A DNA stretch of 64,000 nucleotides from IMG/VR virus record IMGVR_UViG_3300042261_002385, positions 310,001 to 374,000 of that record; one strand, 5' to 3'. Both the position numbers and the translations under genes were made by a program. Numbering within the stretch: the stretch's first letter is position 1; each line of letters starts with the position of its first letter. Positions 5,803-13,619 of the stretch are shown piece by piece. Under the pieces are notes generated by a model. The model worked only from the letters and a program-made list of their open reading frames with translations, was not told the DNA's origin and did no database searches.

Positions 5803-6576
5803 ATGGCTAATAAAATCAAATTTCAAATAAAACCTGATAAAATATCTCAATTTATTGAGACTTTAGAAGAATTGACCAGAATCGAAGATACAATTAAATT
5901 AAAAATTGACTCTGATAATATTCTTATGTATTCAATTTTAGGAGGAAACGTAATGTTAGCTTTCAAAAACTATCTAATCAACACCTCTGATTATTTTGTA
6001 GGCAATGAGTTCGACTTTACTCTTGATGTAATTATTGCAAATGCTAAAAAATTCGTAAAGAATTTAAACTTTTTAATGTCATCTGACAAAGTCACCATCG
6101 AATTCTCTTACAAAGAATCACCAGATGATGATGAAATTATGCATGCTCGTTCTATACAGGTTGTTGGTGGTAAACTTAAAGTCAATTGGTTAGCAGGTGA
6201 ACACTATCAACTTAGAGATATTAATAAAGTAGCACTAAAGAACAATTTGAATATTAAAAATAGAAAGTGGTCATTTAAAATTTCTCAATCAGATTTCTCA
6301 GATGTAAAAAAACTTTCAAATATTAATTCAGATAGAATTATAAATATCACTATAGATTCAGGAAAAGTCTTATTTTCTGAAAAGGCAGCTTGGGAATTGG
6401 AAATAGATTCCATAGAAGATGATAGAAATTCTAATCTAATGTTAAATAAGAAATTTTTAAGTTGTATAAGAGATGATAAAGATGTTGAATTTAGTATTTT
6501 TGACAATTTTATGTTAATTCAAGAAACTAACTCAAATTTAATGTTATCTTTTGAGCAAGATTTCTCCGATGATTAA
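5803..6576 (+). CDS. DNA polymerase sliding clamp (gp45/PCNA-like)
   Basis: 257 aa with a two-domain alternating beta/alpha pattern (F..I..L..I.DTIKLKID; F.ISQSDF..VKKL...I.ITID); located near the polymerase gene. Confidence 0.6.
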   Translation: MANKIKFQIKPDKISQFIETLEELTRIEDTIKLKIDSDNILMYSILGGNVMLAFKNYLINTSDYFVGNEFDFTLDVIIANAKKFVKNLNFLMSSDKVTIEFSYKESPDDDEIMHARSIQVVGGKLKVNWLAGEHYQLRDINKVALKNNLNIKNRKWSFKISQSDFSDVKKLSNINSDRIINITIDSGKVLFSEKAAWELEIDSIEDDRNSNLMLNKKFLSCIRDDKDVEFSIFDNFMLIQETNSNLMLSFEQDFSDD

Positions 6577-6966: not shown

Positions 6967-7506
6967 ATGAAGCAAAACAACTTTAGAAAAAGACCAGAAA
7001 TTAAAAGAAAACACAAAATTAATTCAGAACTTATTTTTCCAGAGGTAAGGTTAATCGGAAGAGGAGAGCCAATTGTTTTATCAATCAGAGAAGCTCAAAA
7101 AATTGCTAACGACGAAGAAAAGGATTTGATTCTTATAAACGAAAATCAAACACCACCTATTGTAAAAATAGAAAACTACAATAAGTTTTTATACGAATTA
7201 GAAAAGGCTGAAAAAGAAAAAAAGAGAAACTCTACTAAATCACAACTTAAAGAGATACAACTAAGTGTCAACATTTCTGACCATGATTTAGAAACTAAAT
7301 CAAAAAAAGGTAGAGAGTTTCTTAAAGATGGAGATAAAGTTAAAGTTGTAATATCACTCAAAGGTAGACAAAAAGCTAGTCCTGAAAGAGGAGAGCTTGT
7401 TATGTTAAAATTTGCACAATCAGTTGAAGAATTCGGAATACCAGAATCTTTACCAAAGTTAGAAAGTGGCAAATGGTTAATGATGATAAAGACTAAAAAG
7501 AAATAA
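6967..7506 (+). CDS. infC: Translation initiation factor IF-3
   Basis: INSELIFPEVRLI...PPIVKI..Y.KFLYE..K..K, KEIQL...I..HD...K.K....FL..GDKVKV...KGR: full-length IF3 N and C domains. Confidence 0.95.
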   Translation: MKQNNFRKRPEIKRKHKINSELIFPEVRLIGRGEPIVLSIREAQKIANDEEKDLILINENQTPPIVKIENYNKFLYELEKAEKEKKRNSTKSQLKEIQLSVNISDHDLETKSKKGREFLKDGDKVKVVISLKGRQKASPERGELVMLKFAQSVEEFGIPESLPKLESGKWLMMIKTKKK

Positions 7507-7508
7507 CA

Positions 7509-7536
7509 TAAACTTTTGTCATTAAAAGTCATAAAA
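7509..7536 (+). promoter_or_regulatory. Bipartite promoter (T/G/A)AAAC-N16-nATA (exemplar of 10 copies)
   Basis: TAAAC-ttttgtcattaaaagt-CATAAAA, 5 nt before the polB ATG; identical 16-nt spacing at nine other replication or metabolic loci. Confidence 0.72.
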
Positions 7537-7541
7537 TCTTT

Positions 7542-8975
7542 ATGACTAAAGAAGAAAAAATCAAAAAAGTAGAACTTCTTAAAAGAAAGGCTTCTGATTT
7601 AAAAAAAGAAGTTGATTATTACAACGCTCTTCAATTAGCGCTCAAATTAGTTCTAAATGGATCTTATGGAGCATTCGCTACCTCTTACTTTATTCTATAT
7701 AACAATCACGTTGCTGGAACCATTACCGCACAGGGTAGAGACTTAACCAGAACAATGGATAAAGTAAATGAAGACTACTGGTATAATCAATGGCACTTAG
7801 ACCACGAATTACATTTCAAACTTGGTATAAAAGATGTAACGAAAATAGGTAAAGAAGAGCCTGTATCAATATATGCAGATACCGATTCACTCTTCGTTTC
7901 ATTCAAACCCGCTATTGATCATTGTGTTTGGAAAAATCTTATTTTTGAAAAAAGTTATCTAAATTCATTAGATAAAAAATTTATTATACTTTCATCAGAA
8001 GACATTATCTGTAAAAACGATAATTGTATTGGAATAGCAAACGATATACACACATTAAAAAATCTAATCACACAAGACTACGAACTACTACTGTTTGATG
8101 GAAATTTTGTAAAAGATAGGTCACTAAATAAACTAATTGATGAAGGATTTTTTTCATCCGAGATTAGATGGAACTGGTCTAATGAACAAGACTTTATTCA
8201 CGGAGCAGACCACTTTAGATATGGACAATATTTTAAAGATTGTTTAGAAGAATATGCTAATTCTTTTGGTGTAGAAAATAAAGAAGACTTCGAGTTAGAA
8301 AGGATTTCAGAATCCATTATTAACATTGCTAAAAAGAAGTATATCTGTCATATCACATATGAAGATGGAATTCCTTTTGAAAGACTAAGTTATCTTTATC
8401 CTAAAGGAGTGGAATTGGTAAGGTCATCAACTCCAGCCTTTGCTAGAGAAAAAATTGTAAATATTGTAAAATATCTTTTTACAAATCCAGATACTTTTAA
8501 CATCAAAGATTTACTTAAACTAGTAAAACAACTTAGAAAAGAGTTTGAATTAGCAGACATTGATGATATCGCAATGCAATCATCCTGTTCAAACTATGAC
8601 GTAAAAGTCTTAAATGATAAAACACTTCCACTTCAATTTGTTTCCGGAGCACATTTTGCTGTAAAATCAGCTGCTCATTATAACTACTTACTTTCTAAAG
8701 ACAGAGAGATGCAACAAAAGTATGAGTTCATTAAATCAGGAACAAAAATAAAATACTATGTTTGTAAAGACAAATCAATAACTGATATGTTTGCCTACAT
8801 TAGAGGTTCATTTCCACACGAATTTGCACCACAGATCGATTATGATACTCAATTCGAAAAGTCTATCTTGTCTCCGATAAATTCAATTATTGAACCACTT
8901 GGTATGCCTGAGATTACAAAGAGACTATCAGTGGTTATGGATATCTTTTCTGGATTTGGAAAAGGTGGATTTTAA
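7542..8975 (+). CDS. Family-B DNA polymerase, C-terminal subunit of a split enzyme (fingers/palm/thumb)
   Basis: Motif B LALKLVLNGSYGAF, motif C YADTDS, KKKY, KGVELVRSS; no exonuclease domain or motif A; own promoter and start. Confidence 0.9.
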   Translation: MTKEEKIKKVELLKRKASDLKKEVDYYNALQLALKLVLNGSYGAFATSYFILYNNHVAGTITAQGRDLTRTMDKVNEDYWYNQWHLDHELHFKLGIKDVTKIGKEEPVSIYADTDSLFVSFKPAIDHCVWKNLIFEKSYLNSLDKKFIILSSEDIICKNDNCIGIANDIHTLKNLITQDYELLLFDGNFVKDRSLNKLIDEGFFSSEIRWNWSNEQDFIHGADHFRYGQYFKDCLEEYANSFGVENKEDFELERISESIINIAKKKYICHITYEDGIPFERLSYLYPKGVELVRSSTPAFAREKIVNIVKYLFTNPDTFNIKDLLKLVKQLRKEFELADIDDIAMQSSCSNYDVKVLNDKTLPLQFVSGAHFAVKSAAHYNYLLSKDREMQQKYEFIKSGTKIKYYVCKDKSITDMFAYIRGSFPHEFAPQIDYDTQFEKSILSPINSIIEPLGMPEITKRLSVVMDIFSGFGKGGF

Positions 8976-11961: not shown

Positions 11962-12429
11962 TTGATGAATATTTTCAAAGTTTTAAAATTTTTAATAACT
12001 TCTAAACATTCACATTTTATTTCAGTAGATAAACCAACTTATAAACGGTGGAAATTTTTAGTAATTTTAGCTGTTAAATTAAATAAAAACTACAAGTCAG
12101 TAGAGATTTTTAGAAAGAAATTTAAAATTTTAGAAGATTTCGTAGTTGTTGGTCTCAAATACAGTGGGAAAAATGTGAGAAGAAGAACCTCAGGTTTCGC
12201 AAAGGAATTTATTGAACAAAACAAAAATGCAAAGTGCATTTACTGTGATAGAAAACTCACTCTAGATAACGCGACTGCGGATCACATAATACCAATATCA
12301 GATGGTGGAAATAACTGCCAAGTAAATCTCGTAGTTTGTTGTAAGGATTGTAATAACGAGAGAGGAAATCTTGATTTCAGATACTATATGTCGAAAAAAA
12401 ATAGTAAAAAGTTAAAGTATTTTATTTAA
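11962..12429 (+). CDS. HNH endonuclease
   Basis: CIYC...ATADHIIPISDGGNN...NLVVCCKDCNNERG. Confidence 0.88.
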   Translation: MMNIFKVLKFLITSKHSHFISVDKPTYKRWKFLVILAVKLNKNYKSVEIFRKKFKILEDFVVVGLKYSGKNVRRRTSGFAKEFIEQNKNAKCIYCDRKLTLDNATADHIIPISDGGNNCQVNLVVCCKDCNNERGNLDFRYYMSKKNSKKLKYFI

Positions 12430-13619
12430 AGATATTTAAGACCGTCAAACTTTTTGTTATAATCAACCTCTTCAATTTTTTTCTTTTTTCTTTTAAATTT
12501 AGGTATCCATTTTATATCTAAAACGTCTTTACTAAAGAACATCGGTAATTCTAATTTTTTATACGGGTTCTCAACAAGAGTTGCTAATTTATTTATATCT
12601 TTTACTTTTGATACTCTATGTAAAAGCGCGTATGGATCACTAGAGTTTTTCTTATCCACAATAGACTCAAATAGTTTTTTCCATAGAAAAACCGACCAAC
12701 CATTTTTTAATTTCTCTTCAGATTTTTTATAACCCGCCTCATCATTATCAAAGAAATATTGTATTTGTAAATCATTGGCTTCTAAAAACCGATAGTCTGT
12801 ATTAACACCAACAAGACCAATTGAGTTGGGAAAAAATAGAGAATCTAAATAACCTTCAAATACAGTTATTGTATCTCCGAAGTCAACATTTAAAATATTA
12901 AAATAGTAAGACAATTTATTATAAATTACTAATTGATTTATATCTAACTCTTCTTCAACATCTTTACCAATACTTGTCCACTCAAGTAAGTTTTCATAAT
13001 TATAGATTTTAAACATCCGCCTTTTTCCTTCTTTTAGATTTCTAATTTGAAGACCGAGAACTTTTGTATCTCTTCTATTAAGCATAACTATAATCCATTC
13101 AGACTCATCTTCATTTTTCCAATACTTAGCTTGATAGATGTTTTTGTGAAATTCAGCAGGAATACCCCGACCAATAAGATATTTATATACACCTCCATTT
13201 ACTTGTATTGGTTTGAAATCAGATATCGGGGTTAAGTCTTGAGAAAAAACTCTTTCTAATTCAGAAAGGTCTATTAAGTCTTCAAATTTAGCATCTACAA
13301 AGTCTCCTTCATAATCAGAATAAGTCATAACACTATTTAAGTGTTCAATCATTTCTAACTTTTTATCAGGATCTATTTGTTCATTAAAGTCTTTACAGAA
13401 CTTGTCTAAAGTAGTTTTTTTATCACAGTTGAAACAAATGAAAATTAGACGATTCAAATAAAGATTACCTCTTTTTTTAAACTCTGATTTTCCATCACCA
13501 CAATATGGACAGCAAACGTTTAATCTATCAGTATATTCAATTAACTTTCTTCTTCCTTTGGAAGAAAATTCTTTATTTAACACTGATTGAATTATATTTT
13601 TTATATAGTTCTTGTCCAT
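12426..13619 (-). CDS. DNA primase, T4 gp61-like
   Basis: N-terminal zinc ribbon CPYCGD...CFNC; TOPRIM VFEGYLDSLF, FFDND, KDIN. Confidence 0.88.
   Translation of the reverse strand: MDKNYIKNIIQSVLNKEFSSKGRRKLIEYTDRLNVCCPYCGDGKSEFKKRGNLYLNRLIFICFNCDKKTTLDKFCKDFNEQIDPDKKLEMIEHLNSVMTYSDYEGDFVDAKFEDLIDLSELERVFSQDLTPISDFKPIQVNGGVYKYLIGRGIPAEFHKNIYQAKYWKNEDESEWIIVMLNRRDTKVLGLQIRNLKEGKRRMFKIYNYENLLEWTSIGKDVEEELDINQLVIYNKLSYYFNILNVDFGDTITVFEGYLDSLFFPNSIGLVGVNTDYRFLEANDLQIQYFFDNDEAGYKKSEEKLKNGWSVFLWKKLFESIVDKKNSSDPYALLHRVSKVKDINKLATLVENPYKKLELPMFFSKDVLDIKWIPKFKRKKKKIEEVDYNKKFDGLKYL

What the first reader, a model, noticed from the sequence alone, without database searches (positions are those of the whole stretch)
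7542..8975. Split family-B DNA polymerase: only the fingers-palm-thumb half is here, with an ~80-aa palm insertion
Seen: the gene starts about 30 residues before motif B, has its own promoter, and is preceded by infC rather than by an exonuclease/motif-A half. There is an extra segment (CVWKNL...IRWNW) after YADTDS. Established: gp43 is split in the fingers (gp43A/B) in some Aeromonas T4-like phages. Inference: a heterodimeric polymerase with unlinked subunit genes.
Basis: partly seen in the sequence, partly recalled or inferred. Interest (0 to 1): 0.6.

Follow-up and report, generated by a model that had tools for sequence, protein, structure and literature searches.

The report
Split phage DNA polymerase, C-terminal subunit
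This gene encodes the fingers-palm-thumb half of a family-B DNA polymerase in a huge marine phage. The exonuclease/motif-A half lies 112 kb away in the same genome, so the replicase is most likely a two-subunit enzyme of an already known kind.

Summary
Window 7542-8975 (+) encodes a 477-aa protein that begins 34 residues before motif B. It carries motif B (KLVLNGSYG), motif C (YADTDS), KKKY and the thumb. A phage IF3 gene precedes it.

The missing half exists. A 508-aa ORF with Exo I-III and motif A lies 112,495 bp away on the other strand of the same 436-kb virus record. I found no intact PolB, PolA or PolIII-alpha.

The break sits at the tip of the fingers, as in T4-like 43A/43B phages, with no intein. 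A complex model supports binding (ipSAE 0.80; best control 0.00).

The same unlinked layout recurs in four IMG/VR relatives and in GenBank huge phages, with the halves 7-280 kb apart. Core dN/dS is 0.02-0.07.

The extra segment is exactly 78 aa (residues 133-210). It folds as a small alpha/beta domain of generic flavodoxin-like shape, and four relatives lack it. "Own promoter" is not shown.

Verdict: a real split replicase and a new variant of a known kind.

Side lead: in 24 of 35 distinct relative sequences, but not here, a 36-48-nt stop-plus-hairpin insert interrupts motif B. It resembles the T4 gene-60 translational bypass.

The parts
7542..8975 (+). PolB C-terminal subunit gene (477 aa): second fingers helix, rest of the palm, thumb, C-terminal tail
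   Evidence: Pfam DNA_pol_B 3.5e-20, profile 137-237 and 265-452. At least 120 protein clusters at 82-100% identity, all 441-478 aa. Core dN/dS about 0.02-0.07 with saturated dS.
7542..7643 (+). Residues 1-34: lysine-rich N-terminal helix, the second fingers helix up to motif B. Predicted to pack antiparallel against the C-terminal helix of the N-half.
   Evidence: Aligns with the fingers of the intact 994-aa PolB of phage MaF61, with no added extension. Interface residues C 3-50 contact N 473-508. AF2 models a helix at 3-41.
7644..7670 (+). Motif B, KLVLNGSYG (residues 35-43)
   Evidence: Read directly from the sequence; conserved in all 29 aligned relatives. Uninterrupted here, but cut by a hairpin insert in many relatives.
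7872..7889 (+). Motif C, YADTDS (residues 111-116), with the catalytic aspartates
   Evidence: D113, T114, D115 and S116 are invariant. Residues 117-122 are predicted to pair with the motif-A strand of the N-half, residues 401-410.
7938..8171 (+). 78-aa palm insertion (residues 133-210): compact alpha/beta domain, order beta-beta-alpha-beta-alpha-beta
   Evidence: Absent from L062-L065, LR756504, LR756501 and pT24. AF2 pLDDT is 87-94 inside the whole-subunit model; modelled alone, mean pLDDT is 81 and pTM 0.73. Only generic CheY/flavodoxin-like matches, Z 6.0-6.5, and no Foldseek hit. None of its residues is in the predicted interface with the N-half. Its dN is 3-5 times that of the core.
8331..8342 (+). 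KKKY (residues 264-267), counterpart of the KKRY primer-binding motif
   Evidence: Invariant K264, K265, K266 and Y267. Residues 252-261 contact the N-half motif-A strand in the model.
8922..8972 (+). C-terminal tail (RLSVVMDIF..GF), a possible sliding-clamp-binding tail
   Evidence: Conserved L462, V464 and F469. The clamp-binding role is inferred from the known role of the gp43 C-terminal tail and was not tested.
7507..7541 (+). 35-nt spacer between infC and the C-half gene, with AAACTTTT and ATAAAAT boxes
   Evidence: The boxes recur in relatives whether or not IF3 is upstream. No sigma-70 consensus site above chance. Function not shown.
6967..7506 (+). Phage-encoded translation initiation factor IF3 (179 aa)
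   Evidence: Pfam IF3_N 5.3e-17 and IF3_C 2.5e-25. Found upstream of the C-half gene, directly or within about 2 kb, in many relatives, e.g. L014, L019, L021, L022, L026, L029, L047.
5803..6576 (+). 257-aa ORF, possible gp45-like sliding clamp (a lead only)
   Evidence: No Pfam, PHROG or PDB sequence hit. The protein-atlas feature search reaches a cluster with PF09116 gp45-slide_C at score 0.94. A homologue sits directly upstream of the C-half in L044.
12426..13619 (-). DNA primase (397 aa), replication-gene context
   Evidence: PHROG 47, DNA primase, 3.6e-19.

Best explanation
Window 7542-8975 encodes the C-terminal subunit of an obligate two-subunit family-B replicative DNA polymerase of a huge marine phage (record at least 436 kb). 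The N-terminal subunit is 508 aa. It carries the N-domain, the 3'-5' exonuclease, motif A and the first fingers helix, and is encoded 112.5 kb away on the opposite strand. The polypeptide chain is cut at the tip of the fingers hairpin.

Inferred mechanism: the two long fingers helices, one from each subunit, pack antiparallel. The motif-A strand of the N-half inserts between the motif-C and KKKY strands of the C-half. This rebuilds one palm active site with its catalytic aspartates on two chains. No protein or RNA splicing is involved.

The 78-aa alpha/beta domain after motif C is a lineage-specific surface addition to the palm. It faces away from the N-half, and its role is unknown; a docking site for another replisome protein is a guess. 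The C-terminal tail probably tethers the enzyme to a sliding clamp.

Shown here: gene content, motifs, break position, conservation and purifying selection. Inferred: assembly of the subunits (model only), enzymatic activity, clamp binding and independent transcription.
For: C-half: Pfam DNA_pol_B on profile positions 137-452 only.

N-half: Pfam exo1 and DNA_pol_B on profile positions 18-151. phmmer aligns it to RB69 gp43 residues 109-493 at 5e-24. It lies at G000:C1:203521-205047 (-).

No other PolB piece, PolA or PolIII-alpha Pfam match in the record, which is 95% complete.

Alignment with the intact 994-aa PolB of phage MaF61 puts the break between the two fingers helices, with no extra residues.

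Complex prediction gives ipSAE 0.80, 0.80 and 0.81 against a best control of 0.00, with 375-381 contacts. The partner's pLDDT is at least 78 and the runs share at least 93% of their contacts. In calibration this mark was reached by 51 of 78 solved complexes and 2 of 108 mismatched pairs. The contacts are those expected of a rebuilt palm and fingers.

The C-half modelled alone has pLDDT below 50 exactly in the motif B, motif C and KKKY core, which fits a need for the partner, though a shallow alignment could also cause this.

Conservation: at least 120 clusters at 82-100% identity, all 441-478 aa, and 54 IMG/VR loci. The halves are also apart in relatives: about 95, 132, 170 and 42 kb in four IMG/VR genomes, and about 7-280 kb in the GenBank huge phages LR745206, LR756500-LR756504 and the Lak phages.

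Core dN/dS is 0.02-0.07.

Precedent: phage 25 gp43A and gp43B co-purify and are active (PMC2988022). Pfu PolB split at the finger tip keeps full activity (PMC3061061).
Against: There is no biochemical evidence for this protein pair. The complex score may partly reflect the model's memory of single-chain PolB structures, so it shows likeness rather than affinity (caveat stated). Co-expression of the two genes is not shown, and I found no convincing shared promoter motif. The record is 95% complete, so a further polymerase gene in the missing part cannot be excluded. An identical C-half protein also occurs on a 522-kb contig. The function of the insertion is unknown.
Confidence: 0.87

Rival explanations
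1. The two chains are joined after translation, or the two RNAs are joined, into one polypeptide, as in split-intein PolB genes.
For: Split inteins do occur in this very gene family. L044 and L056 carry one at DTD|S and L053 at D|TDS; Pfam Intein_splicing scores 1.5e-10 on the L044 piece. LR756500 carries intein-like blocks, read by eye.
Against: At the finger-tip break there are no intein residues. The N-half ends and the C-half begins inside the fingers helices, with no spare length compared with intact MaF61. There is no Intein hit in either half. The genes lie on opposite strands 112 kb apart.
Confidence: 0.03
2. The ORF is a relic. It would be a decaying fragment of a polymerase gene that is no longer used, with replication done by another enzyme.
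For: Only half a polymerase is present at this locus. Huge phage genomes carry many fragmented genes (PMC12880540).
Against: All catalytic motifs are intact. Core dN/dS is 0.02-0.07 with saturated synonymous sites. The length is kept at 441-478 aa in at least 120 clusters. The matching N-half is intact in every relative searched that has it. No other polymerase family was detected.
Confidence: 0.02
3. The split is an assembly or binning artefact: a chimeric contig that separated the two parts of one gene.
For: The record is a metagenome-derived virus contig.
Against: The same ORF boundaries, including the start at MTKEEK and the stop of the N-half, appear in dozens of independent assemblies and in finished GenBank genomes. 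Each half has its own start and stop codon.
Confidence: 0.01
4. The halves work apart. The N-half would be a stand-alone proofreading exonuclease, and the C-half would pair with another protein or have another role.
For: The genes are unlinked, on opposite strands, and show no common upstream motif.
Against: Motif A (on the N-half) and motif C (on the C-half) each supply one catalytic aspartate, so neither half can polymerise alone; this follows from established family-B polymerase chemistry. The predicted interface is large and specific. The two halves co-occur in four of the five relatives searched; the fifth, with no N-half match, may be a fragment.
Confidence: 0.05

Closest known systems
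Bicistronic (43A/43B) gp43 of T4-related phages: Aeromonas 25, 31, 44RR and 65, and Acinetobacter 133 (Petrov et al. 2006 and 2010, as cited in PMC2988022 and PMC3061061)
   Same: A family-B replicase of a myovirus-type phage, cut in the finger tip into an exo/motif-A subunit and a motif-B/C/thumb subunit. The subunits co-purify and are active. The N-half here is closest to RB69 and T4 gp43 among solved structures.
   Different: There the two genes are 2 bp to 3 kb apart and in the same orientation. Here they are 112 kb apart on opposite strands (7-280 kb in relatives). The 78-aa domain after motif C is not described there. The hosts and phage clade differ: huge marine phages related to LR7565xx and the Lak phages.
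Methanothermobacter thermautotrophicus split PolB (Kelman et al. 1999, as cited in PMC3061061)
   Same: Two unlinked genes (85 kb apart) encode one family-B polymerase.
   Different: It is archaeal, and the cut lies in the palm, about 83 residues C-terminal to the finger tip.
PhiKZ DNAP-N/DNAP-C, gp82 plus gp50 (PMC13648687)
   Same: A jumbo-phage family-B polymerase made of two separately encoded subunits that form a 1:1 interdigitated complex. It also has large palm insertions.
   Different: The cut lies inside a large helical palm-insertion domain after motif A, not in the fingers. It belongs to a divergent PolB clade and has an Rhc partner. Its insertion precedes motif C and is helical, whereas this one follows motif C and is alpha/beta.
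Engineered finger-tip split of Pfu PolB (PMC3061061)
   Same: It shows by experiment that a family-B polymerase cut at the finger tip reassembles and keeps full activity.
   Different: It is artificial and bicistronic with translational coupling.
T4 topoisomerase genes 39 and 60 with the MobA cassette and 50-nt bypass (bioRxiv 10.1101/2022.08.31.505936)
   Same: This applies to the relatives only. The C-terminal piece of a split essential gene carries, 34-42 codons after its start, a short non-coding insert made of a stop codon plus a hairpin. Most sites have a duplicated take-off/landing codon.
   Different: A different gene (polB rather than topoisomerase II), with no sequence likeness. No homing endonuclease lies next to the break in these genomes. 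The window's own copy has no insert. Bypass has not been demonstrated.

Membership tests
Family-B (T4 gp43-like) DNA polymerase | Polymerase motifs B (KxxxNSxYG), C (DTDS) and KKRY in the C-terminal part | tested here: met
   KLVLNGSYG (35-43), YADTDS (111-116) and KKKY (264-267), conserved in 29 sequences. Pfam DNA_pol_B scores 72.7 bits against a cut-off of 23.
Family-B (T4 gp43-like) DNA polymerase | Exonuclease motifs Exo I-III and motif A (DxxSLYPS) in the N-terminal part | tested here: met
   These lie on the separate 508-aa ORF outside the window: FIDIE, YDWLY, YYNAVD and DFASLYPT. Pfam exo1 scores 27.6 bits and DNA_pol_B 35.2 bits, both above the cut-off of 23. RB69 gp43 residues 109-493 match at 5e-24.
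Finger-tip split (bicistronic 43A/43B type) PolB | The break lies between the two long fingers helices, and each piece is a complete ORF | tested here: met
   N-half residue 491 aligns with RB69 residue 493, and the chain ends 17 residues later. The C-half starts 34 residues before the motif-B lysine. Alignment with intact MaF61 shows no missing or added segment.
Finger-tip split (bicistronic 43A/43B type) PolB | The two genes are adjacent (2 bp to 3 kb apart, same strand) | tested here: not met
   They are 112,495 bp apart on opposite strands. Relatives are likewise apart. Tenacibaculum phage pT24 keeps the adjacent form, with two intervening ORFs.
Finger-tip split (bicistronic 43A/43B type) PolB | The subunits associate and the complex polymerises DNA | tested here: inconclusive
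   In silico only: ipSAE 0.80 against a best control of 0.00, a mark reached by 51 of 78 solved pairs and 2 of 108 mismatched pairs. Activity cannot be tested with these tools.
Split-intein (trans-spliced) PolB | Intein N- and C-terminal blocks flank the break | tested here: not met
   No Intein_splicing hit in either half and no spare residues at the break. Relatives do have split inteins, but at motif C and not at the finger tip.
Gene-60-type translational bypass cassette | A non-coding insert (stop codon plus stem-loop) inside the ORF, with the reading frame resuming downstream | tested here: not met
   The window's ORF is continuous through motif B. The whole 436-kb genome contains no C4-5...G4-5 hairpin with a stem of 7 bp or more. 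The feature is present in 24 of 35 distinct relative sequences.

The most novel reading that the evidence does not exclude
The finger-tip break and the motif-B coding gap may be two marks left by gene-60-like mobile cassettes that colonised the polB of this clade of huge marine phages. On this reading, most relatives can make the C-subunit only if ribosomes bypass a 36-48-nt stop-plus-hairpin insert. That would be the first such recoding outside topoisomerase genes, and it would sit in the replicase itself. The window's copy would be the cassette-free allele of the same split gene. The enzyme in relatives would then be built from two to three separately encoded pieces, using three different tricks: subunit assembly, split inteins and ribosomal bypass.
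Probability: 0.4. Interest if true: 0.8.

Novelty: new variant of a known kind. Interest (0 to 1): 0.42.

Why it matters
It settles the annotation: two unlinked 'partial polymerase' ORFs in this phage and its huge-phage relatives are the two subunits of the only recognisable replicase, not fragments or errors. It extends the finger-tip split known from T4-like phages to a clade where the subunit genes have drifted 7-280 kb apart. This means that subunit stoichiometry cannot rest on translational coupling. The clade also offers natural variants for studying how modular a family-B polymerase is: with and without a 78-aa palm domain, with split inteins at motif C, and with a hairpin gap in motif B. 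If the gap in relatives is crossed by ribosomal bypass, a phenomenon so far tied to one gene family becomes testable in a second, independent system.

Tried and rejected
**Promoter**
- The sigma-70 scan found nothing above chance near the start.
- A motif shared by the two halves (GTCATA..AAAAT) turned out not to be identical or enriched.
- The genome-wide upstream motif TAATATATA (ATATATA in 148 of 425 crude gene calls) is not in front of the C-half here.

**Insertion**
- It gives no separate Pfam match.
- Foldseek against the PDB gave no match at E <= 0.001.
- VIA-align gave only generic receiver/flavodoxin-like matches at Z 6.0-6.5, within the range common for unrelated folds. No function is assigned.
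- An origin as an intein remnant is rejected. The site differs (17 residues after DTDS, whereas the inteins sit at D|TDS or DTD|S) and so does the fold class.

**Whole C-half model**
- The AF2 model has mean pLDDT 62 and a poor core. Its PDB search gave only weak RB69 matches, so no residue-level structural alignment of the C-half to RB69 is given.

**RNA test of the hairpin gap in relatives**
- No RNA contig spans the hairpin of the L038 type.
- One metatranscriptome contig has an uninterrupted junction, but its upstream 30 letters share only 23 of 30 positions with L038 and it has 4 mismatches in the 50 aligned bases. It therefore comes from another strain that lacks the insert.
- The test is inconclusive.

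**Other negatives**
- Rfam has no family for the hairpin.
- Sliding-clamp identity of ORF 5803-6576: no Pfam, PHROG or PDB sequence hit and only an atlas lead.
- The intervening ORFs of pT24 have no PHROG hit.
- The large representative-protein search was not used because the family was not in doubt.
Full report
**What is at the coordinates**

The window is bases 310001-374000 of a 436,265-bp virus record with about 30% G+C, rated 95% complete. ORF 7542-8975 (+) encodes 477 aa.

Pfam DNA_pol_B matches at 3.5e-20, but only over profile positions 137-237 and 265-452. Nothing matches the first part of the polymerase profile or the exonuclease domain.

Read directly, the protein starts 34 residues before motif B (KLVLNGSYG, residues 35-43). 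It continues through motif C (YADTDS, 111-116) and KKKY (264-267), then the thumb. It ends in a conserved hydrophobic tail.

The ATG is the first possible start after an in-frame TAA, and relatives begin with the same MTKEEK. The preceding ORF, 6967-7506, is a full-length IF3, with IF3_N at 5.3e-17 and IF3_C at 2.5e-25.

**The other half**

A search of the whole record with Pfam DNA_pol_B_exo1 and DNA_pol_B finds one further locus, at G000:C1:203521-205047 on the minus strand. It encodes a 508-aa ORF with Exo I (FIDIE), Exo II, Exo III (YYNAVD) and motif A (DFASLYPT).

This ORF aligns to RB69 gp43 residues 109-493 at 5e-24 and ends 17 residues after that alignment. Its Pfam polymerase match covers profile positions 18-151, complementary to the C-half.

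The two genes are 112,495 bp apart on opposite strands. The record holds no complete PolB and no Pfam match to PolA or PolIII-alpha.

**Where the chain is cut**

Flavobacterium phage MaF61 has an intact 994-aa PolB. Aligned to it, the N-half ends in the first long fingers helix and the C-half begins in the second. No residues are missing and none are added. Neither end has intein blocks.

This is the finger-tip split described for T4-related phages 25, 31, 44RR, 65 and 133. In those phages the genes are 2 bp to 3 kb apart, and the phage 25 subunits co-purify and are active (PMC2988022, PMC3061061). An engineered finger-tip split of Pfu PolB keeps full activity (PMC3061061).

Two other split family-B polymerases have unlinked genes but are cut elsewhere. 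The Methanothermobacter PolB is cut in the palm, with genes 85 kb apart (PMC3061061). PhiKZ DNAP-N/C is cut inside a palm-insertion domain (PMC13648687).

**Do the halves fit together?**

Complex prediction on the two full chains (985 residues) gave ipSAE 0.80, 0.80 and 0.81 against a best control of 0.00. It found 375-381 contacts. The partner's pLDDT was at least 78, and the runs agreed on at least 93% of their contacts. In the tool's calibration this mark was reached by 51 of 78 solved complexes and 2 of 108 mismatched pairs.

The contacts are those of a rebuilt polymerase:
- N-half residues 401-410, just upstream of motif A, pair with C-half residues 117-122 and 252-261, next to motif C and KKKY.
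- N-half helix 473-508 lies against C-half helix 3-50.

The tool warns that likeness to solved single-chain polymerases can raise the score. The result supports a fit and does not measure binding.

Modelled alone, the C-half has pLDDT below 50 exactly in the motif B, motif C and KKKY core. That fits a need for the partner but could also come from the shallow alignment.

**Is it real and in use?**

The word search returned at least 120 protein clusters at 82-100% identity, all 441-478 aa. IMG/VR holds 54 related loci.

The distance between the halves in relatives was as follows.

| Genome | Distance between halves |
|---|---|
| IMG/VR G001 (483 kb, 98% complete) | about 95 kb |
| IMG/VR G002 (465 kb, 98% complete) | about 132 kb |
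| IMG/VR G006 (271 kb) | about 170 kb |
| IMG/VR G007 (191-kb fragment) | about 42 kb |
| GenBank LR745206, LR756500-LR756504 and Lak phages | about 7-280 kb |

Tenacibaculum phage pT24 keeps the halves adjacent, with two small ORFs between them.

Between the window and eight relatives, synonymous sites are saturated while core dN is 0.07-0.18. This gives dN/dS of about 0.02-0.07 wherever dS can be estimated. A relic and an assembly error are both excluded.

The nearest cultured relatives infect Bacteroidota (Flavobacterium, Chryseobacterium, Tenacibaculum, Prevotella). The runs that hold a close relative are marine.

**The insertion**

Four relatives (L062-L065) are 72-75% identical elsewhere but go straight from ..CEWKH to a short linker. 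Against them the window has exactly 78 extra residues, 133-210. LR756504, LR756501 and pT24 also lack the segment. LR756501 instead has an insert of about 100 aa before motif C.

AlphaFold gives the segment pLDDT 87-94 even inside the otherwise poor whole-subunit model. Modelled alone (residues 120-232) it has mean pLDDT 81 and pTM 0.73, with the order beta-beta-alpha-beta-alpha-beta.

Foldseek finds nothing at E <= 0.001. VIA-align gives CheY/flavodoxin-like receiver domains at Z 6.0-6.5, with rmsd 2.6-2.8 A over about 80 residues. The tool's own note says this level is common for unrelated small alpha/beta folds.

None of the segment's residues is in the predicted interface with the N-half. 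Its dN is 3-5 times that of the core, but its conserved positions (F, N.NC.G, DG, WNW) are kept. I take it to be a lineage-specific surface domain of the palm. Its role is open; a docking site for another replisome protein is a guess.

**The promoter claim**

This is not shown. The consensus scan finds no site above chance in the 35-nt spacer.

An A/T box (ATAAAAT or TATAAT) lies 4-9 nt before the ATG in nearly all relatives. AAACTTTT lies about 30 nt upstream in about half of them, whether or not IF3 is the upstream gene. That fits an own start signal, but equally an SD-less initiation region.

I found no convincing motif shared with the N-half gene.

**Side lead in relatives, not in the window**

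In 24 of 35 distinct relative sequences, the C-half coding sequence is interrupted 33-42 codons after its ATG. The interruption is just before or inside motif B and is an insert of 36-48 nt. The insert lengths fall in all three classes modulo 3.

Each insert usually starts with a stop codon 0-1 codon after the last homologous codon; four lineages (L029, L048, L063, L065) lack this early stop. A perfect G+C-rich stem of 9-19 bp follows, mostly CCCCC...GGGGG. More than 20 different stem sequences occur, so the structure covaries. The reading frame resumes in whatever frame results. In many cases this is directly after an in-frame stop and without any start codon (L034, L032, L046).

At three of the four insertion sites, the last codon before the gap is repeated just before the resumption:

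| Pair | Loci |
|---|---|
| CTT...CTA | 11 lineages (CTG and CTC upstream in two more) |
| GCT...GCA | L023 |
| GCT...GCT | L062 |
| GTT...GTA | L043 |
| GTT...GTT | L056 |

At the fourth site, after NGSY, there is no repeat.

Several further observations bear on it:
- The hairpin is the only C5...G5 hairpin in the whole 483-kb G001, and one of two in the 465-kb G002.
- In both of those 98%-complete genomes the interrupted gene is the only C-half copy.
- The 33 codons upstream of the gap are under purifying selection in the interrupted genes, with pN/pS 0.23.
- The window's genome has no such hairpin anywhere.

This anatomy matches the T4 gene-60 bypass cassette: a split essential gene with a stop plus stem-loop about 45 codons into the downstream piece and paired take-off and landing codons. 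The only survey I found in the library searched reports such cassettes solely in topoisomerase genes (bioRxiv 10.1101/2022.08.31.505936).

I rate ribosomal bypass as the leading reading, at roughly 0.5-0.6. The rivals are RNA-level excision and a further split into a 34-42-aa peptide plus a chain that re-initiates.

The one RNA test I could run was inconclusive. No RNA contig spans the hairpin allele.

**Other fragmentation in relatives**

- L044 and L056 carry a split intein at DTD|S, with a Vsr-like ORF between the pieces. Intein_splicing scores 1.5e-10 on the L044 piece.
- L053 carries a split intein at D|TDS, with its halves 27 nt apart.
- LR756500 has a similar three-piece gene, judged from intein-like blocks read by eye.
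- Fragmentation of polymerase genes by endonucleases has been noted in other huge phages (PMC12880540).

**Verdict**

It is a finger-tip-split family-B replicase, a known kind. Two features differ from the described cases: the subunit genes are dispersed by about 100 kb, and a 78-aa palm domain has been added. I did not find this layout described for this clade in the library searched.

Interest is moderate for the window itself. The hairpin gap in relatives deserves its own follow-up.

Noticed in passing
L034:4100-4142; also L023, L024-L027, L029, L032, L040-L046, L048-L050, L052-L056, L058-L060, L062-L066 (same gene, 33-42 codons after the ATG): A 36-48-nt insert interrupts motif B of the C-half gene in 24 of 35 distinct relative sequences. 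It usually begins with a stop codon, followed by a covarying 9-19-bp G+C hairpin, and the frame resumes without a start codon. At most sites the last codon before the gap is repeated after it (CTT/CTA, GCT/GCA, GTT/GTT). It is the only C5...G5 hairpin in a 483-kb genome. It resembles the T4 gene-60 translational bypass. The window has none.
   Followed up: partly
L044:2128-5095, L056:2077-5077, L053:4136-6060, L011:2784-6184 (LR756500): In some relatives the C-half is cut again by split inteins at motif C (DTD|S or D|TDS). L044 and L056 have a Vsr/REase-like ORF between the intein halves. In L053 the halves are 27 nt apart. The polymerase is then encoded in three pieces.
   Followed up: partly
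window 6967-7506 (+): A phage-encoded, full-length translation initiation factor IF3 lies directly upstream of the polymerase C-half. This neighbourhood is kept in many relatives (L014, L019, L021, L022, L026, L029, L047).
   Followed up: partly
window 5803-6576 (+): A 257-aa ORF with no Pfam, PHROG or PDB sequence match. The protein-atlas feature search points to clusters carrying gp45-slide_C (score 0.94). A homologue sits right before the C-half in L044. It may be the sliding clamp that the polymerase tail binds.
   Followed up: partly
whole genome G000; upstream 60 nt of crude gene calls: ATATATA (core of TAATATATA) occurs upstream of 148 of 425 crude gene calls, about 16-fold over expectation. 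It is probably a phage promoter class. It is absent before the C-half in the window but present about 45 nt upstream of it in L023, L034, L043 and L062.
   Followed up: partly
L009:2285-3985 (LR756501): The 735-kb phage's C-half is 566 aa. It has an insert of about 100 aa before motif C, plus N- and C-terminal extensions, but lacks the 78-aa insert after motif C. The palm loops on both sides of motif C are therefore insertion hot spots.
   Followed up: no
window 11962-12429 (+) and 12426-13619 (-): An HNH endonuclease gene (HNH_5, 7.5e-12) abuts the 3' end of the DNA primase gene (PHROG 47, 3.6e-19) and overlaps it by 4 nt.
   Followed up: no
L038:3700-5460, runs X17-X20: Marine metatranscriptome assemblies hold contigs 90-100% alike to parts of the C-half gene of a relative. 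One contig carries an uninterrupted motif-B junction from a strain without the hairpin. Whether these are transcripts or carried-over DNA is not known.
   Followed up: partly
L023-L065, codons 10-14 of the interrupted genes: Most hairpin-bearing alleles encode ..IESLK.. (nucleotides GAGTCATTAAAAA) where uninterrupted alleles have ..ELLK or ..EELK. This co-variation between an upstream element and the presence of the gap is unexplained.
   Followed up: no
protein P0001 (identical to the window's C-half): The identical protein is recorded on a second contig of 522,324 bp. The phage genome may therefore be larger than the 436-kb record, which IMG/VR labels a provirus.
   Followed up: no
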